From NCBI RefSeq assembly GCF_032191835.1, contig NC_083236.1, positions 70,680,001-70,744,000 of the forward strand: 64,000 bases of DNA, written 5' to 3'. The notes beneath the pieces are model-generated. The model saw nothing but the letters and a program-made list of their open reading frames with translations, did no database searches and was not told where the DNA came from. A program made the translations under genes and the position numbers. Shown piece after piece: positions 269 through 49,251 of this stretch; positions within the stretch are counted from its first letter, which is position 1, and each line of letters opens with the position of its first letter. Source of the DNA: Heteronotia binoei. Taxonomy: Eukaryota.

Positions 269-3200
269 CGCGTGGTCGTGGAGATGAACCGCTTGGGCAT
301 GATGGCGGACCTGGCCCACGTCTCTGTGGAGACCATGAACGACGCCCTGAACGTCTCCAGAGCACCAGTCATCTTCAGCCACTCCTCGGCCTATGCCATC
401 TGCCACCACCGACGCAACGTGCCAGACGACGTGCTCCTCCGGGTGGTGAGCGAGGCCAGGGTGGGGCGGGGTGGCTCGTGGCAGAGGCACAGGGTGGTGG
501 TGGTGGGGGGGGGGGAGACTGGAGGATGAGAAGGCCAGGCAAAAGAAACCCCAGCTCTCTTCTCCTAGGGAGGCTTGACCCTCTTCAGCTGGCCTGCCTG
601 TTTCCTTTCTTTCTCCCAACTGAGGCAGCCATTCTTTATCTGCAGAGCTGCGCCCGACTACTGGCCCGTTCGGCCCCTCTCTTCTCTGGAGGTGGGGGAG
701 ATGCAAAGAAGATAAAACCCTCTCTTCATTAGAATGATTCAGGCAGCTTTTGATGGCTTGTTCAGGGACCGGCCAGGCTGGGTGGAATCAGGAGGAGAGG
801 TGGAGCCGGGTCTTGAAGGGAAATAGGACTGCCACTCCCGGGGGGGGGGGGGGCAGGGGATTCCACCAGTTTGAAGGCCCTCCCCCTGCTTCAGGGTTAT
901 CAGAAAGCAAGGGGGGGGGGGAATGTCTGCTGGGCACTCCATTATTCCCTATGGAGACCAGTTCCCATAGGGCAGAGGTGGCCAATGGTAGCTCTCCAGA
1001 TGTTTTTTGCCTACAACTCCCATCACCCCCAGCCAGATGGCTGGGGGTGATGGGAGTTGTAGGCAAAAAACATCTAGAGAGCTACCATTGGCCACCCCTG
1101 CCATAGGGTATAATGGTGAATTGATCTGCAGGTATCTGGGGCTCTGTAGGGGGCTGTTTTTTGAGGTAGAGGCACCAAACTTTCAGCATAGCATCTGATG
1201 ACTCTCCTCAAAACACCTACCAAATTTCAAAAGGATTGGACCAGGGGGTCCAATTTTATGAGCCCCCAAAAGGTGCTCCTATCCTTTATTATTCCAAATG
1301 GAGGGAAGGCATACAAAAGGAGCATGGTCCTGTTGAATGTGAGAGCCAGAACTCCCTTCAGAGTTCAATTGTGCTTGCCAGACCTTTGCTCCTGGCTCCA
1401 CCCCCAGAGTCCCCAGATATTTCTTGAGTCAGACTTGGCAATCCTAAAGGGAGAGGGGGCCATGCCCCCTCCTCTGCCTGAATGTGCCCCTCTGCCTCTC
1501 CTCCCAGAAAAAGACCCGTGGCCTCGTGATGGTCAACTTCTACAATGACTACGTGTCCTGCAGCTCTAAGGCCACCCTCAGCCAGGTCGCTGGTAAGTCA
1601 GGGAGCAGGGAAGGAGGTGGGGCAGGGCGGGGGGTGGGGAGAACTGAAGCATCCAGAGGACGTCTTGACCTCCTGCTGCTCCTTCCTTCAGATCACCTGG
1701 ACTACATCAAGCAAGTGGCTGGGGCTGAGGCGGTCGGACTTGGAGGAGATTATGATGGTGTCAGCAGGTATCTTGGGGAGGGGAGACAAGCTCTGCCTAA
1801 TAGCCAGCTCCCCACCCCACCCCCAGTGCACGGCTGGCCCGAGAGGCACTTGAGCCTGCAACAGGGGGCCGTGTTGCCTGGGGACAGCCTGCTGAAGGGC
1901 CACCCAGGACTGATGACAGGAAGGGCTGCTGTCATATTAGGATGGGGTGGAGTCGCTTTCTGTGGGCCCTGAAGGTCAGACCAGAAGCAGGTTGAAATTA
2001 AATCAGAAGAGTTTCTAGCTTATGGAGAGGGATGGTGGTTTAGCAGGTAGAGCATCTGCTTGGGAAGCAGAAGGTCCCAGGTTCAGTCCCCGGCATCTCC
2101 AACTAAAAAGGGTCCAGACAAATAGGTGTGAAAAACCTCAGCTTGAGACCCTGGAGAGCCATTGCCAGTCTGAGTAGACAAGACTGACTTTGACGGACGA
2201 AGGAGGGTCTGATTCAGTAGAAGGCAGCTTCATATGTTCAGTTATTAGGGGAGGGATGGTGGCTCAGTGGTAGAGCATCTGCTAGGGAAGCAGAAGGTCC
2301 CAGGTTCAGTCCCCGGCATCTCCAACTAAAAAGGGTCCAGACAAATAGGTGTGGAAAACCTCAGCTTGAGACCCTGGAGAGCCGCTGCCAGTCTGAGTAG
2401 ACAAGACTGACTTGGATGGACTGAGGGTCTGATTCAGTATAAGGCGGCTTTCTATGTTCATAACATTAGGAAGAACTTCCTGACACAGCAGTTCGTTTGG
2501 TGTAGTGGTTAAGTGCGTGGACAGCACCTTCTCTGTCCAGAACAGAGGGTCTGGTCTGCTCCCCACTGAGAAGCACGTCCATCCTCCATGAAACCAAAAC
2601 CGAAAGTCAAGTAGTGGTTAAGTGCATGGACTCTTATCTGGGAGAACCGGGTTTGATTTCCCACTCCTCCACTTGCACCTGCAGGAATGGCCTTGGGTCA
2701 GCCATAGCTCTGGCAGAGGTTGTCCTTGAAAGGGCAGCTGCTGTGAGAGCCCTCTCCAGCCCCACCCACCTCACAGGGTGTCTGTTGTGGGGGGAGAAGA
2801 CAGAGGAGATTGTGAGCCATTTTGAGTCTTTGATTCAGAGAGAAGGGCAGGGTATAAATCTGCAGTTCTTCAATTCTTCTTCCTCAGTGGAACAGGCTTC
2901 CTCCTGGGGAGGTGGTGGGCTCTCCTTCCTCGAAGGTTTTCAAGCAGAGGCTAGATGGCTATCTGACAGCAAGGCTGATCCTGTGAATGAGGCAGATCAA
3001 GAGAGGGAGGGCAGGAGGGGCTGCATCAGCGCTTAGTTCTTGTGGCCCTTTCTTACACACCCAGGGAAATGCTGATTCCCACTTTGGGGTCAGGCAGCAA
3101 TTTTTCTCTAGGACAGTCTGGCCAGGGATCCTGGAAGGGGTTTTTTTTTGCCATCTTCAGGGCATGGATCAAGTGTCATAGGCGGTGGGAGGTTTTTGTG

Positions 3201-4445
3201 AGTTTCCTGCATTGTGCAGGGGGTTGGACTTGATAACCTTGGAGATCCCTTCTAACTCTGACTCTAGGTAGTTCTGAGGGCTTACAGGGGCATAAGAACT
3301 GTCCTGAGGACAGACCCAAACTGCCAGGGGAGGGACTCCCAGCAGCCTCTCTTTCCTGGCCTCTCCAGCAGGGCCCACCCCCTGCTGAGCCTCCCATCTG
3401 TCCTTGTGATGGAAGCCCGTTGGGCGGACTCCGGGGGTGGGGGTCTTCCCCCCTCCTCCTGGGGCTCCCTGGGACAGGGCAAGGAAGACCGAGCTCTTGC
3501 TCCGGGGGCTTCACCTGGGTGTTCTCTGGTATCACAGAGTCCCGGTTGGCTTGGAGGATGTCTCCAAGTATCCAGACTTGATTGCAGAGCTGCTGCGGAG
3601 GAACTGGACGGAGAGTGAAGTGAGAGGCGCCCTGGCAGGCAACCTGCTGCGGGTTTTCCGGGAAGTGGAGCAGGTAAGGTGGAGATCAGCAGACACCAGC
3701 TGTGGGGTGCAGGGAGTGAGCGGCACAGGAGAGCCTTCATTAAGAACATAAGAGAAGCCCTGTTGGATCAGGCCAGTGGCCCCTCCAGCCCAACACTCTG
3801 GGTCACAGAAGAACATAAGAGAAGCCCTGTTGGATCAGGCCAGTGGCCCCTCCAGCCCAACACTCTGGGTCACAGAAGAACATAAGAGAAGCCCGGTTGG
3901 ATCAGGCCAGTGGCCCCTCCAGTCCAACACTCTGTGTCACATAAGAACATAAGAGAAGCCAAGTTGGATCAGGCCAGTGGCCCCTCCATTCCAACACTCT
4001 GTGTCACATAAGAACATAAGAGAAGCCCTGTTGGATCAGGCCAGTGGCCCCTCCAGTGCAACACTCTGTGTCACAGAAGAACATAAGAGAAGCCCTGTTG
4101 GATCAGGCCAATGGCCCTTCCAGCCCAACACTCTGTGTCACACAGGGGCCAAAAAACCCCAGGTTCCATCAGGAGGTCCACCAGCGGGGTCAGGGCACTA
4201 GAAGCCCTCCCAGCTTATTCATGCATAAACTGGCTCTGTTCTGCCCCCCTCCTCCCTTCTTCTCTTGGACTCGGAGCTGAGCCGCTGCAGCTCAAGACCC
4301 ATGCACTCTCCCCTCCCCCAACCCTGCTTACGACCCGGCTCTTTTCCTTCCCCAGGTGCGGGACAGGATGTCTTTGGAAGCTGTCTCCCCTGACGACGTG
4401 CCCATTGCATCTGAGGAGCTGCAGGGGTCATGCCGAACTCACTAG
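269..4445 (+). CDS. DPEP1: Dipeptidase 1 (renal membrane dipeptidase), last five coding exons; 5' exons lie before the window
   Basis: GT-AG exons 269-445, 1508-1592, 1692-1767, 3538-3673, 4356-4445 splice in frame: [36 protein letters not shown]|..[12 protein letters not shown]..|[18 protein letters not shown]|..[22 protein letters not shown]..|..GSCRTH*. Metal/catalytic motifs AHVS, FSHSS and GGDYDG are retained. Upstream neighbour of CHMP1A, as in human. Confidence 0.95.
824..1446 (+). mobile_element. hAT MITE (TAGGGTTGCCA family) with nested insertion
   Basis: Degenerate TIRs; 8-bp TSD AAGGGAAA/AAGGGAGA. Confidence 0.8.
973..1100. mobile_element. 128-bp palindromic hAT MITE
   Basis: 63-bp inverted arms (2 mismatches) with a 2-nt loop; perfect 8-bp TSD CCATAGGG (965-972, 1101-1108). 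Confidence 0.9.
2022..2460 (+). mobile_element. Tandem dimer of a tRNA-derived SINE with CR1-like tail
   Basis: Two ~215-bp copies with A-box (GGCTCAGTGG) and B-box-like (GGTTCAGTCCC) head and a ..TATGTTCA tail. Confidence 0.75.
2610..2882 (+). mobile_element. tRNA-derived SINE with L2-like tail (family present about 12 times in the window)
   Basis: Head GTAGTGGTTAAG, B-box GGTTTGATT, tail ..GGGTATAAATC plus (TCT)n. Confidence 0.8.
3742..4212 (-). repeat. Tandem array of six 67-bp CR1 3'-terminal units in the last DPEP1 intron
   Basis: Unit AAGAACATAAGAGAAGCC..GTCAC starts at 3742, 3809, 3876, 3943, 4010, 4077; the last runs into CR1 3' UTR body. Confidence 0.9.
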
Positions 4446-4627
4446 GGGGACACTCTGTCCCGGATTCGCCTGCTCTGCTGGCGCCCTTTCTCCTGCCTGA
4501 TGGCTGCTGTAGAAGCCCCCAAACTCACTAAGCCCCGGCTGAGCAGGTCATGCTGCAAAGCCAGCATCTGTTATAAGCCGCCCTGAGCCCTGCTACTTGC
4601 AGGGAAGGGTGGCCTAAAAATGTAATT

Positions 4628-4633
4628 AATAAA
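4628..4633 (+). terminator. Probable DPEP1 polyadenylation signal
   Basis: AATAAA about 180 nt after the stop codon. Confidence 0.6.
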
Positions 4634-4974
4634 ATCGCGTCTCACACCTCAGTCAACACTGTACCCCCTTTGCCCCCCCTCCCCACCTCTTGTGGTAGGA
4701 AACACAGAAAAACCAGCTGTCCTTCTGCTCCTATGCTGGATTTTTGATTGGGCCATGCGGGGGGGGGGGGGGGGGGAGTGTAAAAGAAAATATTGGCAGC
4801 CAAATCCAGTCATTGCCATTGTATTGTTTCCCTTCTGCATTGTCATGCTGCCTCCTTCTAAGGAGTTGTGGGCTCAGTCGAGTCTCTCTCCCAGTGCTTT
4901 TCTCCACTGCCACCCTGGGAGGAGGCTGGGCTGAAAGGTGACTGGCTCCAGGTGACCCAGAGAGCATCAAGGCC

Positions 4975-5278
4975 AAAATCTCCTTCCTTGGAGGTTCTTC
5001 AACAGAGGCTAGATGGCCATCTGACAGCAATGAGGATCCTGTGAATTAAGGGGGAGGTGTTTGTGAGTTTAGAGCGATTCCTCAGTGGAACAGGCTTCCT
5101 CCTTGGGAGGTGGTGGGCTCTCCTTCCTTGGAGGTTTCTCAACAGAGGCTAGACGGCCATCTGACAGCAATGAGGATCCTGTGAATTTAGGAGGAGGGGT
5201 TTGTGAGTTTCCTGCCTTGTGCAGGGGGTTGGACTCGATGACCCTGGAGGTCCCTTCTAACTCTAGGATTCTCTGATT
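4975..5278 (+). mobile_element. CR1 3' UTR fragments (two overlapping pieces)
   Basis: AGAGGCTAGATGGCCATCTGACAGCAATGAGGATCCTGTGAAT duplicated; ATTCT-type tail. Confidence 0.75.
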
Positions 5279-6274
5279 CTAAAGTGGGATTTGAACCCTC
5301 ATCTCTCCCCATGCCAACCTGATACAGGGTGTCTCCTCCCGGCCAAGACGCTCTCTCTCTTGGCCTAGCTGAGGTGGCAGGAGCTGCCTGGGGGTAGGGG
5401 CAGGGCTCTGGGTGGAAGCCCCCAGGCAGTGAGGCAGCTCCCAAGGCCCAGGGCTTTTTCTGGGGGGGGGGGGGGGATGAACTGCCACATAGCCTCCATT
5501 CTTGTCCTGCCCCCCCCCCCGTGTGCAGCTCCCCCACCTTTTGCTTGGCCCTCTCCCCCCCCACCCCCCGCTCCCTGGCACATGGGCCTCCCAACATCAC
5601 TGGGGAAGGCTGTGCAGGAAGCCATTGCTGGCAGGGACAGAAGGGGAAGCGCCCAGTGCCAGGGGAGACAAGGCAGAAGACACGGAGGCGGGGAGGCGAG
5701 GGGGAAAGGAGGGTCAGGAGCGGCTCACCTTCCAGGCTCAGGAGCTGGCAAGAAGCAGCCCAACGGCCTCCTCTCACTGGTGGCAAGGCAAGGCAGCCCC
5801 GTCTCCAGGCACAGACGGAGACGCCGAATGCCAGCCAGGCGTCCCGTTCCATGGGCTCCATCCAAGCATCCATCATTAGCTAATTAATTGGCTAATCAAG
5901 CGGCTCATTAGCAGCTTCCTCTGGCATTTCAGGAACAGCCTGTCTTTGCCAGCAGGCAGACAGCGGAAGGCACCTGGGCAAGCGGGGTGGGAGGGGGGAG
6001 TCAGCTTCCTGTTGTGTCGGCTGGCTGGCTGGCTGGGCGGGGGTGGGGGGAGGAGAGGACAGACAGAGATGGGGCTCTCCTTCTCTAGCAAGTGCTGTGA
6101 GCTCCTCAGCAAGGGGGCAGGAGAAGAAGATTCCCTGCTCAACAGCCAGCTGGCCTGGCAGCGCAGACCAGCCATGAGTGGCTCTCAGAACTGCCTGGGA
6201 GGAACCAAAGGGGGCTCCTGAGGCCCATCTGGAAGGTGCTCTCAAGTCACAGCCAACTCAGGTGAGGTTCTCAA

Positions 6275-6585
6275 GGCAAGAGTCATGCAGAGGCAGGTTG
6301 CCGCTGCCGGCCTCTGCGTAGCGACCCTGGACTTCCTTGGGGGTCTCCCATCCGAGTCCTAACCAGACCAGCCCTGCTTAGCTTCTGAGATCTGATAAGA
6401 TCAGGCTAGCCTGGGCCACCCCAGGTCAGGGCAAGAGACATCCAGAGGCGGTTGGCCCTTGCCTGCATCCGCGTTGCAACCCTGGACTTCCTTCATGGTC
6501 TCCCATCCACGTACAAACCAGGGCCGACCCTGTTTAGCGCCTGAGCTCTGATTAGACTGCCCTTGCCAGGGCTATGCGGGTCAGG
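6275..6585 (-). mobile_element. Two tandem 5S rRNA-derived SINE heads
   Basis: Reverse complement GATCTCAGAAGCTAAGCAGGGCTGGTCTGGTTAGGACTCGGATGGGAGACC resembles the 5S internal control region; diverged repeat with period about 155 bp. Confidence 0.75.
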
Positions 6586-6857
6586 GAACTGCTCCAGACA
6601 GCCCCCATTGCCGTGTAGGCAGGACACTCGAGGGCAATCCCTTGCATGGAACCCAGAGGCGTCGCAATAGAAGAGACTGCTTCTAGAGATCTTCCCAGCC
6701 CCGCCTGACCCTTTGGCAGTGTGCTAAGGCTGTTCACTTCTTGCCTGTTGCCTTGTGACCAAAGCCCCAGGGAGACCAGGTGTTTGGTTCTGCAGCCTTT
6801 CCTGCAACTCCTTTCCCCATTCAAAACACTCCTAAGGAACAACTCCTCCGCTGTGAC

Positions 6858-7005
6858 CAGTGTGCCCTCTAAGCTGAGTTAGTGTGAGCTCGCACAGATT
6901 TTTAGCCTCCAGCTCACACATTTTTGTCTCGGCTCAGGAAGGCTGGCCCCAGAGCACGCGAATTTCTGCAGCAGCTCACAAAGTAGAATTTTAGCTCCCA
7001 AGACT
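6858..7005. mobile_element. Probable hAT MITE fragment
   Basis: Starts CAGTGTGCCCTCTAAGCTGAG, a hAT-like terminus; right end not resolved. Confidence 0.45.
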
Positions 7006-7032
7006 CCACAGCTTAAAGGGAGTCTTGGCTGC

Positions 7033-8017
7033 GACTATAATAATAATAATACTTTTTATTTGTATCCCGCCCTCCCCGCCCGTGCAGGCTCAGGGCAGCT
7101 CACAACATACGAATGTAATATACAATAAACCCATACATAGTAATTACAATTACAATTATAAGATCATCATTAAATCATTAACAACTTGTATTAAAATTAA
7201 CATTATGGTGCTATAACTTAGGTCTTCAATAAAATTCAGTGGCTAAAACATGTCCAGCGAAACTTTCTTGGCTCGGTATTAGGTGAAGGCTATTTTGAAG
7301 AGGTAGGTCTTACAGGCCCTGCGGAATTGGTCTAAACATCGCAGGGCCTGTACCTCCTCCGGGAGTTGATTCCACAGCAGTGGAGCTGCAGTGGAGAAGG
7401 CCCGATCCCGGGTGGTCTTCAGTCTGGCCTCACTTGGCCCAGGGATATTCAGCTGGTTCTTTCCAGCTGACCTCAACGCTCTCTGGGGCTCATATGGGGA
7501 GAGACGGTCCCTCAAGTAGGCAGGTCCTCGGCCATATAGGGCTTTAAAGGTGATAACCAGCACTTTGTAATGGACTCAGTACACCACTGGCAGCCAGTGC
7601 AGTCCGCGCAGCCCCGGCTGAATGTGCTCCCATCTTGGGAATCCCAACAGCAGCCTAGCCGCCGCGTTCTGCACCAGCTGCAGCCGCCGAGTTCGGCACA
7701 AGGGCAGCCCCATGTAGAGGGCGTTACAGTAGTCCAGTCTCGAGGTGACCGTAGCATGGATCACCGTTGCTAGGTCCCGGCGCTCCAGGAAGGGGGCCGA
7801 CTGCTTCGTCCGTCGAAGGTGAAAGAACGCGGACTTGGCAGTGGCCGCTATCTGTGCCTCCATTGACAGTGAAGGCTCCAGAAGAACCCCCAAGCTCTTG
7901 ACCCTGGGGGTTCAGCAGCACACGTCAAAAAACGGAAGGGGGATTTCCCTTCCCGGGGCACCGCGGTCCAAGCAAAGGACCTCTGTCTTTGTTGGATTCA
8001 ACTTCAGCCCACTCTGA
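7033..8017 (-). mobile_element. L2 LINE 3' fragment (ORF2 C-terminus plus tail)
   Basis: HATVTSRLDYCNALY..LQLVQNAAARLL..LHWLP..FKALYG..RAFSTAAPLLWNQLP; (TAA)n-type tail near 7035. Confidence 0.9.
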
Positions 8018-8541
8018 ACTGGTTTCCAACTGCATCTCCTCGTTGTGGTGAGTCTGGTGCTTCTGTAAGAATGTGTTAACTGCAGCAGCCACATTGCCTG
8101 TTTCCCTCATGGGTGCCAGTCTTCATGGGCCAGTTCTCACCCCTTGACAAGACTGGTGTTGCGGATACTGGGGCAGCCTTGCCCCCAAGGCCAGCTTTCT
8201 GGTCAGATTCATTCCACAGCATCTGTGCAAGGCTTCCGTCTCCTCAGTGAGCCAAATTCACACGTGCCCTGCTGGCCCTATAATGCCTGCCGTGAGTGGC
8301 TTTGAGGGAAGGTGCTTTAAAATGCACGTGAAACAGGTTTCCGAACTGTGCACAAGGCCATGGAGAAAGGGAGGCCAACAGGTGCGTTTTAGGCTCCTGT
8401 GCACGTAACAAAAATGTCTGTTGGGCTTGTCTGTGGCATCGTTAGGGGGAAGGAGCCCTCCAGTGGCCAAAGCAATCAGTGCAAAAAACATCAGAGCCCA
8501 GTGGCACCTTGAAGACCAAGAAAGTTATATTCTGGGGATAC

Positions 8542-8932
8542 AAGAAGATGTTGGATTTATATCCCGCCCTCCACTCCGAAGAGTCTCAGAGCGGCTCACA
8601 ATCTCCTTTCCCTTCCTCCCCCACAACAGACACCCTGTGAGGTAGATGAAGATATTGGATTTATATCCCGCCCTACACTCCGAAGAGTCTCAGAGCGGCT
8701 CACAATCTCCTTTCCCTTCCTCCCCCACAACAGACACCCTGTGAGGTGGGTGGGGCTGGAGAGGGCTCTCACAGCAGCTGCCCTTTCAAGGACAACCTCT
8801 GCCAGAGCTATGGCTGACCCAAGGCCATTCCAGCAGGTGCAAGTGGAGGAGTGGGGAATCAAACCCGGTTCTCCCAGATAAGAGTCTGCACACTTAGCCA
8901 CTACACCAAACTGACTCTCTACAGACATAACC
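8542..8932 (-). mobile_element. tRNA-SINE (L2-tail family) with duplicated 3' end
   Basis: Tail segment repeated at 8542-8645 and from 8646; head ends CCACTACACCAAACTG. Confidence 0.85.
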
Positions 8933-9330
8933 ACTACACCAAACAACAGAATAAAACTTTTTTGATCTTAAAGGTGCCACTGAACTCAAACTTAGTTCTG
9001 CTGCTTCAGAACCACACAGCTGCCCACCTGCAAAAAATGTATCTCCTAACTTTGATGGCGGGCAGGGGGGAGACTGTGACAACAGCTCTGCCCCCTAATA
9101 AGACTCCACCCATGTTGGTCTTGGAATGCAAAAGTGTCTGTTCTCATCTGATACACCCAACACCAGAGTGAAAACTTCCAAGCAGGGCTGGACGGACCAA
9201 TGCTCTGGAAACTGCAGTTCAGGACAAGAATTATGGACTAATGGGGGAACAAGTTAAACATAACCCCTGATATTCTGTTGTAGATTCCCTCCTGCCTTCT
9301 CCAGTTCTCAGCTGACTCGGGGGCAGGGAT

Positions 9331-10625
9331 AAAAACATACGAGAAGCCATGTTGGATCAGGCCAATGGCCCCTCCAGTCCAACACTCTGTGTCACATAAG
9401 AACATAAGAGAAGCCCTGTTGGATCAGGCCAATGGCCCCTCTAGTCCAACACTGTGTGTCACATAAGAACATAAGAGAAGCCATGTTGGAGCAGGCCAAT
9501 GGCCCCTCCAGTCCAACACTCTGTGTCACATAAGAACATCAGAAAAGCCCTGTTGGATCAGGCCAATGGCCCCTCTAGTCCAACACTGTGTCACATAAGA
9601 ACGTAAGAGAAGCCCTGTTGGATCAGGCCAATGGCCCCTCTAGTCAAACACTCTGTGTCACATAAGAACATAAGAGAAGCCATGTTGGATCAGGCCAATG
9701 GCCCCTCCAGTCCAACACTCTGTGTCACATAAGAACATAAGAGAAGCCATGTTGAATCAGGCCAATGGCCCCTCCAGTCCAACACTCTGTGTCACATAAG
9801 AACATAAGAGAAGCCATGTTGGATCAGGCCAATGGCCCCTCCAGTCCAACACTCTGTGTCACATAAGAACATAAGAGAAGCCATGTTGGATCAGGCCAAT
9901 GGCCCCTCCAGTCCAACACTCTGTGTCACATAAGAACATAAGAGAAGCCATGTTGGATCAGGCCAATGGCCCCTCCAGTCCAACACTCTGTGTCACATAA
10001 GAACATAAGAGAAGCCATGTTGGATCAGGCCAATGGCCCCTCCAGTCCAACACTCTGTGTCACATAAGAACATAAGAGAAGCCATGTTGGATCAGGCCAA
10101 TGGCCCCTCCAGTCCAACACTCTGTGTCACATAAGAACATAAGAGAAGCCATGTTGGATCAGGCCAATGGCCCATCCAGTCCAACACTCTGTGTCACACA
10201 GTAGCAAAAAAACAAAAAAGGTGCCATCAGGAGGTCCACCAGTGGGGCCAGGAAACTAGAAGCCCTCCCACTGTTGCCTTCCCCAAGCACTAAGAAGACA
10301 GAGCATCACTGCCCCAGACTTAAGAACATAAGAGAAGCCATGTTAGATCAGGCCAGTGGCCCATCCAGCTCAACACTCTGTGCCAAACAGTGGCCAAAAA
10401 ACCCAGATGCCATCAGGAGATCCACCAGTGGGGCCAGAACTCCAGAAGCCCTCCCACTGTGCCCCCCCCCCCCGCAAGCACCAAGAGTACAGAGCATCAC
10501 TTGCCCCAGCCACAGTTCCAACAATATGCTGTGGCTTATAGCCACTGATGGACCTCTGCTCCAGATGTTTATCCAATCCCCTATGTAAAGCCAGGGGATA
10601 TGTAAGCCTTCATGCCACCAGTGGT
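9331..10625 (-). repeat. Array of thirteen 67-bp CR1 3'-terminal units, plus a fourteenth unit and CR1 3' UTR body
   Basis: Unit starts 9331, 9398, 9465, 9532, 9597, 9664, 9731, 9798, 9865, 9932, 9999, 10066, 10133, then 10322; units 8-12 appear identical. Confidence 0.92.
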
Positions 10626-10641
10626 TTCCAGACAGTATTCA

Positions 10642-10647
10642 TTTATT
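10642..10647 (-). terminator. Candidate CHMP1A polyadenylation signal
   Basis: TTTATT on + (AATAAA on -) about 1.2 kb past the stop, at the end of the unique sequence just before the CR1 remnant. Confidence 0.45.
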
Positions 10648-11858
10648 TAAAACAACGTCAAGGAATTAACAGTACTTGGTTTAATTCTTTAAAAAAAAGA
10701 GAGAGAGAAGGCAAACCAGAACACAGGACCCCAAGAGTTGGAGGACATGCCTTCCATTGACCGAGAAGGCCTTTGATACATGCTTCCCCCAGATCTTTAC
10801 AGCAGGAAGGGGAGACGGAGGAGCAGGAAAGGTACAAGGCCCTTGAGAAATTGAAAAGGGGGGGGGGGTCAAAAGAGAGCAATAATAGCCTCTTTTCAGA
10901 TCCCAGCAAGAGACTTTCATCCCCCCTTTCCAGCCCTCTGCCTTAAGTCCTGCTTTACAGGGCTGACCTCTTGAGCAGGTTGCTTCTCAGTGCTGCTTGG
11001 GCAGAACGGAGCATGGCAGCCGCGTCCAGGATCAGTGCTCGAAGCCATCCAGCAACCTCTGCTTCGAGGCCCCAAGTCTTTTTGACAACAGCAGGGATGT
11101 CTGGGAAGAGGCAGAGAAGTCTCTCTAGCAGCAGAGGCCTCAGGAAATGGGCCAAAGCCAACCTGCATGCAGGGAGGCCTGCTGGGGAAAGCGGAGGAGG
11201 GCCTCAAACCCAGCTGATGGGAGTTCCAGGGAGGGGTGGGTGCGGAGGCAGCAGAGGGTGAGTGCATCAATAACAAAGGTCACTTGACGGTGCTTGTCAA
11301 TCCAAGGGAGGGAGCAGAGGTGCTGCCAAAGGGGGTCTGGGGAGCACATCTCATCTACTGGCAGGCCTGACCCCCGGGAGCCACAAAAGGAGGAGCGCCA
11401 TGCCATGCCTGCCTCTACACACGCAGGCAGCAGTGTGGATCGGGACCCTGCTCCTTTTCAGAATGCACGCAAGCTCATTCTTGCAAGGGCCACGTTTGAA
11501 TTCGTTTGCAAGGGTCCTGGGATCCGATTCCTCCAACCCCCAAACCCAAGAATGTGACCCAAAACCCAGACTGAAAGGAGAGTCTCTGGAACAAAAAACA
11601 ACCCTGCAAAGTGTCCCCCCCCCCCCCGCTTACATGTAGGCAAGCCTGCCACCGCCTCTGCCGCTTCAGAGAGGAGCTGAGCAATCATCCCGAAATGGGG
11701 GGAGGCATTTAGTGATGGTCTTGCCACGTGCCCACAGAGTGGGGGACCAGTCCAAAGAGGAGGAGGAGGGGGGAACAGAAGGCCAGGGGTCTCTTACAGA
11801 GACCCCACAAATCATACATGGCCGAGGCAGAAGCAGCACTTCCTAGGAGCGAGGGAGG

Positions 11859-22355
<10,497 letters not shown>

Positions 22356-24571: not shown

Positions 24572-25379
24572 ACTTAGAATAAATTTCCCTGGCTCAGCTT
24601 TTCCATTTCAATCCTGTTAGAGTTAATTCTGTGGGAAGGAGCCCCATGACTTTGAAGGGGGCAGCCCAGCCCCCGGGGCCTGAAGCCATCCTGGCCCTTC
24701 CCCATTGAGAGACCCCAGGCTTTCCAGATGGAGGAACAGATGAGAGGGTGTGTCCGGGGTCTTCCTTGAGCCGAGGTCCCTCTTTGGGCAGCAGCATGTG
24801 GTGTGCAGTTTCTTTGATGATGATGGCGCTGCTTGGTGCTGAGTCACAAAAGGACCCAAGCAGTGCCACAAGATGTAGCAGTGCCAATGAAGGGGGGGGG
24901 CAAGGGCTGTTGGCTCACCTATGGGGCGGTCTCACAGCAAACAGGACGACGGGGCAGGAGGTAAAGCATTCTCATTCCTCTTAACAAAGGGATGCTGCGG
25001 AAGGCTAAAAGCTGGCATGAGCGAGGCCAGGCTGGGAGGAAATCTCAAGAGTCAGGGCCTTTGGGTTTGGTGAGCAGCTTCCACTGCAAGCACCCTCACT
25101 TAGAGAAGGCCTGGCCTTGGACTGTCTGGCACCCTAGGCAAGGCTAACCTCTGGCACCCTCCCTCCCCCCGCCTTCACTGATAACATCACCGAGTCACAT
25201 GGGGAGCACCCAATCAGGCGTCCCCAGAAGGCCAGCGCCCTCGGAAATCACCCACTTTGCCCAGTGGCAGCGCCAGCCCTGGCTTGAAGGCTTGGGGTGA
25301 AATATGAAGCATGCTTTCCCACAGAGATCCGGGGGAGAGACTTTTCGGTAAACATGCTGCAGACCAGGATAGCTGAGAT

Positions 25380-26682
25380 ATTAGCCACAGCGTATTATTG
25401 GAACTCTCTGTCTGGGGCAGGGATGCTCTGTCTTCTTGGTGCTTGGGGGGCACAGTGGGAGGGCTTCTAGTGTCCTGGCTCCACTGGTGAATCGCCAGTG
25501 GCACCTGGGTTTTTTGGCCACTGTGTGACACAGAGTGTTGGACTGAATGGGCCATTGGCCTGATCCAACATGGCTTCTCTTATGTTCTTATGTCTGGGGC
25601 AGGGATGCTCTGTATTCTTGGTGCTTGTGGGGGGGAACAGTGGGAGGGCTTCTAGTGTCCTGGCCCCACTGGTGGACCTCCTGATGGCACCTGGGTTTTT
25701 TGCCACTGTGTGACACAGAGTGTTGTACTGGATGGGCCATTGGCCTGATCCAACAGGGCTTCTCTTATGTTCTTCTGTGACACAGAGTGTTGGACTGGAG
25801 GGGCCATTGGCCTGATCCAACAGGGCTTCGCTTATGTTCTTACGTCTGGGGCAGGGATGCTCTGTATTCTTGGTGCTTGTGGGGGGGGCACAGTGGGAGG
25901 GCTTCTAGTGTCCTGGCCCCACTGGTGGACCTCCTGATGGCACCTGGGTTTTTTGCCACTGTGTGACACAGAGTGTTGTACTGGATGGGCCATTGGCCTG
26001 ATCCAACAGGGCTTCTCTTCTGTTCTTGCAGTGATGCTCTGTATTCTTGGTGCTTGGGGGGCAGTGGGAGGGCTTCTAGTGTCCTGGCTCCACTGGTGAA
26101 CCGCCAGTGGCACCTTGGGTTTTTGGCCACTGTGTGACACAGAGTGTTGGACTGGATGGGCTGCTGGCCTGATCCAACAGGGCTTCTCTTCTGTTCTTGC
26201 AGTGATGCTCTGTATTCTTGGTGCTTGGGGGGCAGTGGGAGGGCTTCTAGTGTCCTGGCTCCACTGGTGAACCGCCAGTGGCACCTTGGGTTTTTGACCA
26301 CTGTGTGACACAGAGTGTTGGACTGGATGGGCTGCTGGCCTGATCCAACATGGCTTCTCTTATGTTCTTCTGTGACACAGAGTGTTGGACTGGATGGGCC
26401 GCTGGCCTGATCCAACATGGCTTCTCTTATGTTCTTCTGTGACACAGAGTGTTGGACTGGAGGGGCCATTGGCCTGATCCAACAGGGCTTCTCTTATGTT
26501 CTTATGTGACACAGAGTGTTGGACTGGATGGGCTGCTGGCCTGATCTACATGGCTTCTCTTATGTTCTTATGTGACACAGAGTGTTGGACTGGATGGGCT
26601 GCTGGCCTGATCCAACATGGCTTCTCTTATGTTCTTCTGTGACACAGAGTGTTGGACTGGATGGGCTGCTGGCCTGATCCAA
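25380..26682 (+). repeat. Compound array of CR1 3' ends (67-bp and ~175-185-bp units)
   Basis: Reverse complement of the 67-bp unit; about five long units interleaved with or followed by five to six short units. Confidence 0.88.
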
Positions 26683-47796: not shown

Positions 47797-49251
47797 CTAC
47801 AAGAGCTTGTCCACCTCTGTCCGCTGCAGCCAGAGGCGCTGCTGCTTCTCGCTCTGCAGCTCTTCGACGTGGTGGGCGCTGCGACAGTGCTGGGCCATCT
47901 CGCAGCCGCTGCCATGCAGCAAGCGGCAGCTGCCGCAGCAGGAGGAAGGGAGCGCCCCCGGGAGCAGGCACGAGTGCAGATGGTAGCGGGGAGGCTCTGG
48001 GCCCATCACTCCTGAGACCAGCCCCTGAGCTCGCCGCAGGCCCAAGGGACTCAGCTGGGGACTCCGTGGCTGCCTGGCAGAAGGAGAGGCTGGGCTACTG
48101 GGGCTGCGCGGCTGAGGGCTGGAGCTGCCGTAGTGGGGGATGGGGGACAGGAACTGGCTTCCCGGCTGCACGGGGCTGGAGTCTGTGTCACTCAGCCTGC
48201 TGAGCTCCCGCCGCAAGGAGATGAAGGAGAAGGAGGTCTCCAGATCAGGCCCTTCGGAGGCCATGAGCCCATTCCCATAGGGCTGCTCCAGGCCAGGCCC
48301 CCACAGCTTGCTCCTGCCCTCCGGGAGGCCCTGGGGGCTCCTGGCATGCAGTTCCTTGCTCCTCAGCCTGGGGCTGCAGCTGCTGCGCTCATAGGGGGCA
48401 GGCTGATGCAGAGGCGGCAGCCTGGATCCTGGAGGCTCGCCATAACGGTTCGGCTCCTCGGGGCTCTCCCCATATAAGTCGACCCCATCGGCTGGCTCTG
48501 TGCAGAAGTCTTTGCCCCTGGGCCAACGAGCCAGGCTCTGCAGCTGGGCCACGCAGCCCTCCAGGCCGCCCCTGACCTCCCGGCGGGCCTGCAGCAGCTC
48601 TTCCGAGGAGATGCCACAGAGCTCTGTCTCCTCCACGATCTTGCCTAGGATTTCGCACTCCACCCGGGCGGCAAAGAAGCTGCAGGCGACGCGGAGGAGG
48701 CCGGCTCCCGGTGGCAGCTGAGAAATCACCAGGTGGAGGTTGTCTCTCTGGACATAGCCCATCCGGTGGAAACTCCTGGCGATGTCGGCCTCAGACAGCA
48801 CTCCTTGGAGGACGTGCACGTAGACGCCTGAGAAGGTCTGCAAAGGGAGACACCTGTCAGCCCCCCCCATGAGATGAGACAGAAGGACAGCCTGCTCTTA
48901 TGCCCACCCCCCCCAACTCCCAATAGCCCCAGCAGCGCTCACTTTTATGGTGCTAAATTCTTTCCGCCAGGGGAAGAAGTAGAGATTGACAGCCGCCAGC
49001 TCCAATACTTCAAAGGCTCTGCAGAGATTCTGGAGGGCCACGCCCAGGTCCAACTGTCCCCGCAGGGCCCCCGCGATCATGGCAAAGGTGTCTTCCCCTT
49101 GCAAGGCGCAGTGCAGCTCCGGCTCCTCCAGCAGCTGGCGCCACAGCACCTGTTTCAGGGAGGAGTCCGCGCACACGCCCATGTGGCCCCTGCGGAAGTC
49201 CCTCTCCAAGCAGCGCCGGTATTCCTCCTGCAGCGCAGCACCGGGATTCAT
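47797..49251 (-). CDS. SPATA2L: Spermatogenesis-associated 2-like (PUB domain plus C-terminal Cys/His zinc-finger-like region), 449 aa
   Basis: Exons 48943-49251 and 47797-48837, GT-AG. EYRRCLERDFRRG..AFEVLELAAVNLYFFPWRKEFSTIK|TFSGVYVHVL..FSFISLRRELSR..HSCLLPGALPSSCCGSC..RLWLQR matches SPATA2L. Confidence 0.95.

What the first reader, a model, noticed from the sequence alone, without database searches (positions are those of the whole stretch)
4443..4512. DPEP1 stops at a conserved Tyr just before the GPI signal: predicted anchor-less, secreted dipeptidase
Seen: the last exon reads ..[11 protein letters not shown]. Known: human DPEP1 continues GSCRTHYGYSS (GPI omega Ser) plus a hydrophobic tail, and the Cys in SCRTH forms the inter-subunit disulfide. 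Seen: restoring one C (TA[C]GGGGGA) gives [18 protein letters not shown], and a third frame carries WLL-TAG at 4501-4512, which looks like the fossil of a hydrophobic GPI signal broken by frameshifts. The metal/catalytic motifs and the dimer Cys in the visible exons are intact. Inference: a lineage-specific switch from brush-border GPI ectoenzyme to soluble secreted dimer, or a recent loss-of-anchor allele. The lesion borders a G5 run, so an assembly error is possible, although one indel alone does not restore a terminal hydrophobic tail.
Basis: partly seen in the sequence, partly recalled or inferred. Interest (0 to 1): 0.72.

Follow-up and report, generated by a model that had tools for sequence, protein, structure and literature searches.

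The report
Gecko DPEP1 lost its GPI anchor signal
In Bynoe's gecko the kidney/gut enzyme dipeptidase 1 ends at a stop codon just before the tail that normally gives it a lipid (GPI) anchor, and that tail has decayed. The enzyme is otherwise intact and probably leaves the cell as a soluble protein; two Gekko species and a skink gene copy carry a stop at the same codon.

Summary
Observation confirmed. The window is identical to the Heteronotia binoei reference assembly (GCA_032191835.1). It holds the last five exons of the true DPEP1 orthologue, with CHMP1A-like and SPATA2L-like neighbours.

- **The stop.** The last exon ends ...[11 protein letters not shown] at 4443-4445. Nearly all other amniote DPEP1 models recovered continue with YGY, a short spacer and a hydrophobic tail.
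- **The old tail.** The former GPI signal is still recognisable up to the ancestral stop at 4510-4512. It carries three more indels (11, 2 and 1 nt), so no frame gives a hydrophobic C-terminus.
- **Assembly error.** No single base error could restore an anchor signal.
- **The rest of the gene.** It is intact, with all zinc ligands, the dimer Cys and a signal peptide. It is under purifying selection (dN/dS 0.12 against Gekko).
- **Other lineages.** Gekko japonicus and G. kuhli, from independent assemblies, have TAG at the same codon after a 39-nt duplication. A tandem DPEP1 copy in Tiliqua scincoides has TAA there.

Best reading: a real, old loss of the anchor signal giving a secreted soluble dipeptidase. 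This is a new variant of a known kind, of moderate interest.

The parts
269..445 (+). DPEP1 exon holding the two His zinc ligands (LAHVS and FSHSS motifs; His215 and His236 of the 385-aa model)
   Evidence: Pfam PF01244 E=1.4e-24, profile positions 166-221. Best solved-structure matches are Dipeptidase 1 chains. Splice sites read.
1508..1592 (+). DPEP1 exon ([15 protein letters not shown]...QVA, ends in phase 1)
   Evidence: Pfam PF01244 positions 224-251. ag/gt boundaries read.
1692..1767 (+). DPEP1 exon ([24 protein letters not shown])
   Evidence: Pfam PF01244 positions 253-275. Boundaries read.
3538..3673 (+). Penultimate DPEP1 exon ([23 protein letters not shown]...EVEQ)
   Evidence: Pfam PF01244 positions 279-319, the end of the domain. 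Boundaries read.
4356..4442 (+). Coding part of the last exon, 29 codons ending ...LQGSCRTH. The Cys codon at 4431-4433 corresponds to the inter-subunit disulfide Cys.
   Evidence: It is 100% identical to the end of the NCBI H. binoei DPEP1 model P0286. The Cys column is invariant in 17 species.
4443..4445 (+). Derived stop codon TAG, replacing the Tyr codon (TAC or TAT) found in other DPEP1 genes
   Evidence: DNA alignment A1. Tyr is nearly invariant in the protein alignment.
4446..4498 (+). Remnant of the omega-site, spacer and hydrophobic-tail coding sequence, now 3' UTR. The old frame is recognisable from 4445 as ...VPDSPALLAPFLLP. Relative to Paroedura there are gaps of 11 nt after 4454, 2 nt after 4467 and 1 nt after 4498.
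   Evidence: (8 of 9 identity to the Euleptes tail).
4501..4512 (+). Remnant of the last three codons (WLL) and the ancestral stop TAG (4510-4512), out of frame with both the coding sequence and the preceding remnant
   Evidence: The TGG/CTG/CTG/TAG block is conserved in all five gecko sequences. WLL-stop is the end of the Paroedura, Euleptes and Eublepharis proteins.
4628..4633 (+). AATAAA, the likely polyadenylation signal of the gene, about 185 nt after the stop
   Evidence: Read directly. Its use was not tested because no RNA data were available.

Best explanation
Heteronotia binoei DPEP1 has really lost its C-terminal GPI-attachment signal.

Shown here:
- The Tyr codon that follows Cys-Arg-Thr-His/Arg in other vertebrates became TAG through a C-to-G change.
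- The 67 nt that once encoded the omega site, spacer and hydrophobic tail have since decayed through three further indels.
- The gene still encodes an N-terminal signal peptide, all five zinc ligands and the dimer Cys.
- The gene evolves under purifying selection.

Inferred mechanism: the protein enters the ER, folds and forms the disulfide-linked dimer. With no hydrophobic C-terminal signal, GPI transamidase cannot act on it, so it leaves the cell as a soluble secreted enzyme rather than staying on the brush-border or endothelial surface.

The change is old rather than a private allele. It is either shared with Gekko (about even odds) or arose in parallel. A stop at the same codon also arose in a skink paralogue.
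For: Identity of the locus:
- The window matches GCA_032191835.1 with 0 mismatches over 7445 nt.
- Orthology is supported by M19 exons, Snf7/CHMP1A-like exons and a SPATA2 PUB-like ORF as neighbours, and placement among gecko DPEP1 in the tree.

How unusual the end is:
- Of 168 long DPEP1-type hits, 155 pass a crude hydrophobic-tail test and 5 more pass on inspection.
- Paroedura, Euleptes, Sphaerodactylus and Eublepharis all keep the YGY, spacer and tail ending GWLL, GCLL or AWLL.

The lesions:
- The DNA alignment shows TAG aligned to TAC/TAT, plus gaps of 11, 2 and 1 nt before the conserved ancestral TAG.
- No frame gives a terminal hydrophobic stretch.

The gene is otherwise functional:
- H37, D39, E142, H215, H236 and C382 of the 385-aa model are invariant columns.
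- dN/dS against G. japonicus is 0.116 over 290 codons, with dS 0.38.

Parallels:
- G. japonicus (GCA_001447785.1) and G. kuhli (GCA_051903775.1) both read TAG GGG at the homologous codon of the second copy of a 39-nt duplication. G. kuhli also has a further 2-nt deletion downstream.
- The upstream tandem copy in Tiliqua scincoides reads TAA GGG TAC CCT, also with downstream decay.
Against: - The only H. binoei evidence is one assembly, and the NCBI model derives from it.
- Secretion, activity and dimerisation are not tested.
- No GPI predictor was available. The tail test is a simple hydropathy rule.
- An unannotated alternative 3' exon cannot be formally excluded without transcripts.
- Whether the Gekko and Heteronotia stops are one event is unresolved. 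The Tiliqua case shows that this codon can be hit independently.
- The G. kuhli protein carries the submitter's flag UNVERIFIED_CONTAM, although its locus aligns to G. japonicus over 15 kb at 83% identity.
Confidence: 0.75

Rival explanations
1. Assembly or sequencing error, or a rare allele of the sequenced animal. On this reading the species normally makes GPI-anchored DPEP1.
For: The stop borders a G5 run.
Against: At least three separate base-level changes within 60 nt would be needed: the TAG and two frame changes. The TAG aligns as a substitution, not a homopolymer length change. Reading TAC alone, or adding one C, still gives no terminal hydrophobic tail. Two Gekko assemblies made years apart carry the same-codon TAG.
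Confidence: 0.08
2. An alternative terminal exon or splice form supplies a GPI signal, so both soluble and anchored forms exist.
For: Transcripts were not available.
Against: In all vertebrate DPEP1 sequences seen, the GPI signal lies in the same exon directly after CRT-YGY. tblastn with gecko tails finds no second copy in the window or in L005. The only weak hit, at 6277-6327, is chance similarity inside a 155-nt repeat. A scan from 4300 to 13000 for stop-terminated hydrophobic tails found one candidate near 8020-8066, with an in-frame stop 17 codons upstream and no homology. Only one H. binoei DPEP1 model appeared in the searches.
Confidence: 0.06
3. The gene is dying. On this reading the stop is the first step of pseudogenisation, not a switch to a working soluble enzyme.
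For: Loss of a conserved targeting signal could abolish function where it matters.
Against: The 385-codon frame is intact, every invariant column of 17 species is kept including the zinc ligands, and dN/dS is 0.12 against Gekko over a dS of 0.38. The 3' remnant meanwhile accumulated three indels, so the body has been kept intact while the tail decayed.
Confidence: 0.04
4. Stop-codon readthrough of TAG-GGG yields some anchored protein.
For: In G. japonicus the 26 codons after the TAG are still in frame and end in a tail-like LFLLAGWLL-stop.
Against: In H. binoei, G. kuhli and the Tiliqua copy the downstream sequence is frameshifted, so readthrough could not give a tail there. No readthrough signal was tested.
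Confidence: 0.02

Closest known systems
Mammalian renal membrane dipeptidase DPEP1 (solved chains 1ITQ/1ITU, 9H0B)
   Same: Peptidase M19 domain, the same zinc-ligand residues, the same Cys near the C-terminus, and an orthologous locus next to CHMP1A.
   Different: The mammalian enzyme is a textbook GPI-anchored ectoenzyme (reviewed with DPEP1 as the worked example in PMC10569057). The gecko protein stops 5 residues before the position where the 369-residue solved chain ends and has no hydrophobic tail.
DPEP1 of other geckos (Paroedura picta, Euleptes europaea, Sphaerodactylus townsendi, Eublepharis macularius)
   Same: 83-87% identical proteins with the same exon structure and the same last-exon sequence up to CRT.
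   Different: These keep YGYP, a spacer and a hydrophobic tail ending GWLL, GCLL or AWLL. H. binoei has only frameshifted remnants of it.
DPEP1 models of Gekko japonicus and Gekko kuhli (398 aa)
   Same: The closest relatives sampled (90-91% identity; clade support 85/86). They also lack the hydrophobic tail and stop at a TAG GGG that corresponds to the same Tyr codon.
   Different: Gekko has a 39-nt tandem duplication, so 13 extra residues (YGYSASASADQ.C) precede the stop. The three H. binoei indels are not shared.
Upstream tandem DPEP1-like copy of Tiliqua scincoides (386 aa)
   Same: The same Tyr codon is turned into a stop (TAA) with a decaying GPI-signal remnant downstream.
   Different: It is an extra paralogue. 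The neighbouring 412-aa copy keeps the anchor signal, so the skink retains an anchored enzyme. No second copy was seen for H. binoei.
Soluble microbial M19 dipeptidases (e.g. Streptomyces 3ID7, fungal GliJ 5LWZ)
   Same: The same fold family, naturally without any lipid anchor.
   Different: Distant homologues (E 1e-14 to 1e-19 on one exon), not secreted vertebrate ectoenzymes.

Membership tests
Peptidase family M19 / vertebrate DPEP1 orthologue | Peptidase_M19 domain | tested here: met
   The four exons hit PF01244 at consecutive profile positions 166-319. The full NCBI model P0286 carries PF01244.
Peptidase family M19 / vertebrate DPEP1 orthologue | Binuclear zinc ligands (His20, Asp22, Glu125, His198, His219 in mature human numbering; numbering from general knowledge of the solved structure) | tested here: met
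   H37, D39, E142, H215 and H236 of P0286 (offset 17) are invariant columns in 17 species.
Peptidase family M19 / vertebrate DPEP1 orthologue | Orthologous position and phylogenetic placement (DPEP1 rather than DPEP2 or DPEP3) | tested here: met
   Best hits are all named dipeptidase 1. The protein nests in the gecko DPEP1 clade. CHMP1A-like (Snf7) exons and a SPATA2 PUB-like ORF lie downstream. That this matches the human 16q24.3 gene order is from memory.
Peptidase family M19 / vertebrate DPEP1 orthologue | C-terminal Cys forming the inter-subunit disulfide | tested here: met
   The Cys codon at 4431-4433 is an invariant column, C382. Formation of the disulfide itself is not testable here.
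GPI-anchored proteins | Cleavable N-terminal signal peptide | tested here: inconclusive
   P0286 starts with a 17-residue hydrophobic leader ending CSA, aligned with the leaders of other DPEP1 proteins. No signal-peptide predictor was available.
GPI-anchored proteins | C-terminal signal: small omega residue, polar spacer, then a hydrophobic stretch reaching the C-terminus | tested here: not met
   The protein ends one residue after CRT. The last 12 residues have mean hydropathy -1.07, against more than 1.2 in 155 of 168 relatives. No frame after the stop ends in a hydrophobic stretch.
GPI-anchored proteins | Release by PI-PLC or detergent-phase partitioning | not testable with these tools
   This is a bench assay.

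The most novel reading that the evidence does not exclude
The switch from GPI-anchored to secreted DPEP1 happened once, before Heteronotia and Gekko split, and has been maintained for tens of millions of years in an Indo-Australasian gekkonid clade. The same Tyr codon was hit again in a skink paralogue. This one-step-from-stop codon, just after the dimer Cys, would then act as a recurrent evolutionary switch between surface-bound and soluble forms of a conserved ectoenzyme. Tissue retention of glutathione and leukotriene dipeptide processing would change, and any role that needs the enzyme tethered to the cell surface would be lost.
Probability: 0.35. Interest if true: 0.62.

Novelty: new variant of a known kind. 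Interest (0 to 1): 0.5.

Why it matters
DPEP1 is one of the classic GPI-anchored brush-border enzymes. Every characterised vertebrate form is membrane-bound, and some proposed roles (from general knowledge: a neutrophil adhesion receptor on endothelium) depend on surface tethering rather than catalysis.

A natural orthologue that keeps the catalytic body under selection but has lost the anchor signal is useful in two ways:
- It is a ready-made test of which DPEP1 functions need the anchor.
- It is a clean example of a change in protein localisation caused by a single nonsense substitution followed by decay of the orphaned signal.

The recurrence of a stop at the same codon in Gekko and in a skink duplicate suggests that this route is easy and tolerated.

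The finding also matters for annotation. The short gecko models are probably correct and should not be repaired.

Tried and rejected
- **Reads and RNA.** Nothing replaces this test.
- **Independent gecko fragments.** A word search with the C-terminal 156 residues of the H. binoei model, aimed at Logan-derived gecko fragments, found none. The best hits were 72-80% identical non-gecko pieces.
Rejected as less parsimonious, because TAG GGG GAC ACT aligns codon for codon with TAC GGG TAC CCT.
- **A duplicated last exon.** A tblastn hit of the Paroedura tail at 6277-6327 looked like one, but it is chance similarity inside a 155-nt tandem repeat and has a stop.
- **A downstream hydrophobic tail.** A scan from 4300 to 13000 gave one candidate near 8020-8066 with no homology and an upstream in-frame stop.
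- **Readthrough.** The idea came from the in-frame remnant in G. japonicus. It was rejected as a general explanation because the remnant is frameshifted in H. binoei, G. kuhli and the Tiliqua copy.
- **Literature.** No paper holds both 'gecko' and 'DPEP1'. A search for soluble or secreted membrane dipeptidase gave only general GPI reviews.
- **Shared or parallel stop with Gekko.** This could not be settled. The three H. binoei indels are not shared, and the flanking codons are uninformative.
- **Joined exon model.** Exons were searched one by one by reference, and the full-length comparisons used the NCBI model returned by the search tool.
- **Human protein.** A human DPEP1 protein appeared in one hit list and was not used further.

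Full report
**What is at the coordinates.**
The sequence at 4350-4451 reads ccccag|GTG CGG GAC ... TCA TGC CGA ACT CAC TAG GGG GAC. After the acceptor at 4355 the frame gives 29 codons, [29 protein letters not shown], and then TAG at 4443-4445.

Four more exons lie upstream at 269-445, 1508-1592, 1692-1767 and 3538-3673, with ag/gt boundaries. Searched one by one by reference, they hit Pfam Peptidase_M19 at consecutive profile positions 166-221, 224-251, 253-275 and 279-319. Exon 269-445 finds solved Dipeptidase 1 chains best.

The last exon aligns to residues 345-364 of the 369-residue human renal dipeptidase chain. The gecko protein therefore stops five residues before that chain's end.

**Where the window comes from.**
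A profile-free search with exon 269-445 gave full-length DPEP representatives. Word searches seeded with two of them returned named vertebrate DPEP1 proteins.

One of these, 'dipeptidase 1 [Heteronotia binoei]' (P0286, 385 aa), is identical to all window exons and ends ...LQGSCRTH. Its genomic locus in GCA_032191835.1 (chromosome CM063338.1) overlaps the window over 7445 nt with no mismatch. The window is therefore Bynoe's gecko, and the NCBI model is not independent evidence.

Downstream on the minus strand lie Snf7/CHMP1A-like exons at about 13-19 kb and a SPATA2 PUB-like ORF at 47800-48897. From memory, this matches the human DPEP1 neighbourhood. Together with the tree, it makes this the true DPEP1 orthologue.

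**How unusual the end is.**
In a 17-species alignment, the Cys-Arg-Thr is invariant and the following Tyr-Gly-Tyr nearly so. Of the 168 long DPEP1-type proteins listed pass a crude test (at least 18 residues after CRT, hydrophobic last 12 residues). Five of the 13 exceptions plainly have tails on inspection.

Four non-gekkonid or Afro-Malagasy geckos (Eublepharis, Euleptes, Sphaerodactylus, Paroedura) all continue YGYP, spacer, L-P-A-L/V..., and end GWLL, GCLL or AWLL.

The tail-less amniote entries are:
- H. binoei;
- Gekko japonicus and G. kuhli (both 398 aa, ending YGYSASASADQ.C);
- one of two tandem copies in Tiliqua scincoides (386 aa, ending CRSRR);
- an odd Crotalus adamanteus model;
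- one Logan fragment.

**DNA anatomy of the lesion.**
I fetched the loci of G. japonicus, G. kuhli, Paroedura and Eublepharis. I aligned their last exon and 3' region to window 4340-4660.

- **The stop is a substitution.** H. binoei CAC TAG GGG GAC ACT lines up codon for codon with C.C TAC/TAT GGG TAC CCT. The stop is a C-to-G change in the Tyr codon, not a missing C next to the G run.
- **Three further indels.** Relative to Paroedura there is an 11-nt gap after 4454, a 2-nt gap after 4467 and a 1-nt gap after 4498. That is 14 nt in all, so the old tail is split over two frames.
- **The ancestral end survives.** The block TGG CTG CTG TAG AAGCCCCC is conserved in all five species, and the ancestral stop is at 4510-4512.
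- **The remnant is homologous.** PALLAPFLL (4469-4495) matches the Euleptes tail at 8 of 9 residues.

**Error or real?**
The internal evidence is still strong.

- Reading TAC instead of TAG gives a 46-residue polar extension ending KPP.
- Only the stop change plus two further frame corrections would give a tail.
- Three independent base-level errors within 60 nt of a chromosome-level reference are very unlikely, and none of them is a long homopolymer.

The pattern is what one expects when a stop codon frees the downstream sequence from selection.

**The rest of the gene works.**
P0286 has a hydrophobic leader aligned with the signal peptides of its relatives. It keeps every column that is invariant across the 17 species. 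These include H37, D39, E142, H215 and H236 (the five zinc ligands at offset 17 from mature human numbering) and C382.

I paired codons exon by exon without joining them. dN/dS against G. japonicus is 0.116 over 290 codons (dN 0.044, dS 0.38). Against G. kuhli it is 0.117. The catalytic body has been held by selection while the tail decayed, so this is not a pseudogene.

**Distribution.**
A protein tree of the mature body places Heteronotia with the two Gekko species (85/86 support) inside Gekkonidae, with Paroedura outside that group (90/89). More non-coding sequence aligns between H. binoei and Gekko than between H. binoei and Paroedura.

Both Gekko assemblies (2015 and 2025) carry a 39-nt tandem duplication of the YGY-spacer segment. 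The second copy begins TAG GGG, which is the same codon and the same change as in H. binoei.
- In G. japonicus the 26 codons after it are still in frame and end LFLLAGWLL-stop.
- In G. kuhli a 2-nt deletion has broken them.

In Tiliqua the upstream tandem copy reads CGC CGC TAA GGG TAC CCT GAC AGT. This is again the same Tyr codon, followed by a recognisable but decayed signal. The next gene downstream (412 aa) keeps the anchor signal.

There are therefore two readings:
- One old event shared by Gekko and Heteronotia, plus one in the skink copy.
- Three parallel events.

The H. binoei indels are not shared with Gekko, and I could not decide between the two readings.

The number of indels gives only a rough indication of age. 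There are three in H. binoei, one in G. kuhli and none in G. japonicus, over about 70 nt, with dS about 0.19 per lineage. This is compatible with neutrality for roughly the time since that split.

**Mechanism.**
- Shown: signal peptide-like leader, intact M19 body, dimer Cys, no C-terminal hydrophobic signal.
- Inferred from established knowledge of GPI attachment: without that signal the transamidase cannot act, and a lumenal protein with no other anchor is secreted.

The solved soluble chains that end near this point show that the body does not need the tail to fold. I therefore expect a soluble, disulfide-linked, active dipeptidase in tubular or intestinal lumen or in plasma, instead of a brush-border ectoenzyme.

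Earlier notes of this scan (unchecked) report intact GPI-type ends in other genes of this genome and a working PIGM copy. If correct, the loss is specific to this gene rather than to the pathway or the assembly.

**Known or new.**
DPEP1 is treated as a model GPI-anchored protein (PMC10569057). No paper in the library mentions gecko together with DPEP1. The short models exist in NCBI, but I found no discussion of them in the papers searched.

I class this as a new variant of a known kind. It is of moderate interest, and more so if the change proves to be one ancient, maintained switch.

**Limits.**
- No reads or RNA.
- No GPI predictor.
- No additional gekkonid genomes were reachable with these tools.
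- The Gekko kuhli entry carries a submitter flag (UNVERIFIED_CONTAM), although its locus is clearly a Gekko sequence.
- The window's exons were never joined for a search.

Noticed in passing
L001:14700-14810 and L002:14210-14320: Both Gekko species carry a 39-nt tandem duplication of the YGY-spacer coding segment of DPEP1, with an internal GCCAGT repeat. The second copy starts with TAG. In G. japonicus the old GPI signal after that stop is still in frame.
   Followed up: partly
L006:10001-19309 and L006:25829-29309: Tiliqua scincoides has two tandem DPEP1 genes downstream of a sulfotransferase gene. The upstream copy (386 aa) has TAA at the same Tyr codon and a decayed signal. The downstream copy (412 aa) keeps the anchor signal.
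   Followed up: partly
P0278 (Sphaerodactylus townsendi DPEP1), C-terminal 45 residues: The spacer before the hydrophobic tail is expanded by repeated D-P-D-N/S-G-D units. The same short segment is therefore prone to tandem duplication in a second gecko lineage.
   Followed up: no
P0283 (Crotalus adamanteus DPEP1 model): The model departs from other snakes right after CRTR (HGLSQEAC...) and runs 67 polar residues with no hydrophobic tail. This may be a frameshift, an alternative 3' end or an annotation artefact at the same spot.
   Followed up: no
window 3742-4142: Six copies of a 67-nt tandem repeat (95% matches) fill much of the last DPEP1 intron. Related units recur at about 10205-10585 and 25217-26493, so this is a dispersed repeat family that forms local arrays.
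   Followed up: no
window 13175-18912 (-): Exons of a CHMP1A-like gene (one Snf7 domain hit; C-terminal exon ending ...[12 protein letters not shown]) lie tail to tail with DPEP1.
   Followed up: partly
window 47800-48897 (-): A 366-codon open frame with a SPATA2 PUB-like domain, probably the large coding exon of SPATA2L.
   Followed up: partly
window 4758-4776 and 500-520: Long G runs (about 19 G at 4758-4776) lie close to the gene. Such runs are the places where length errors would be expected, unlike the G5 run at the stop.
   Followed up: no
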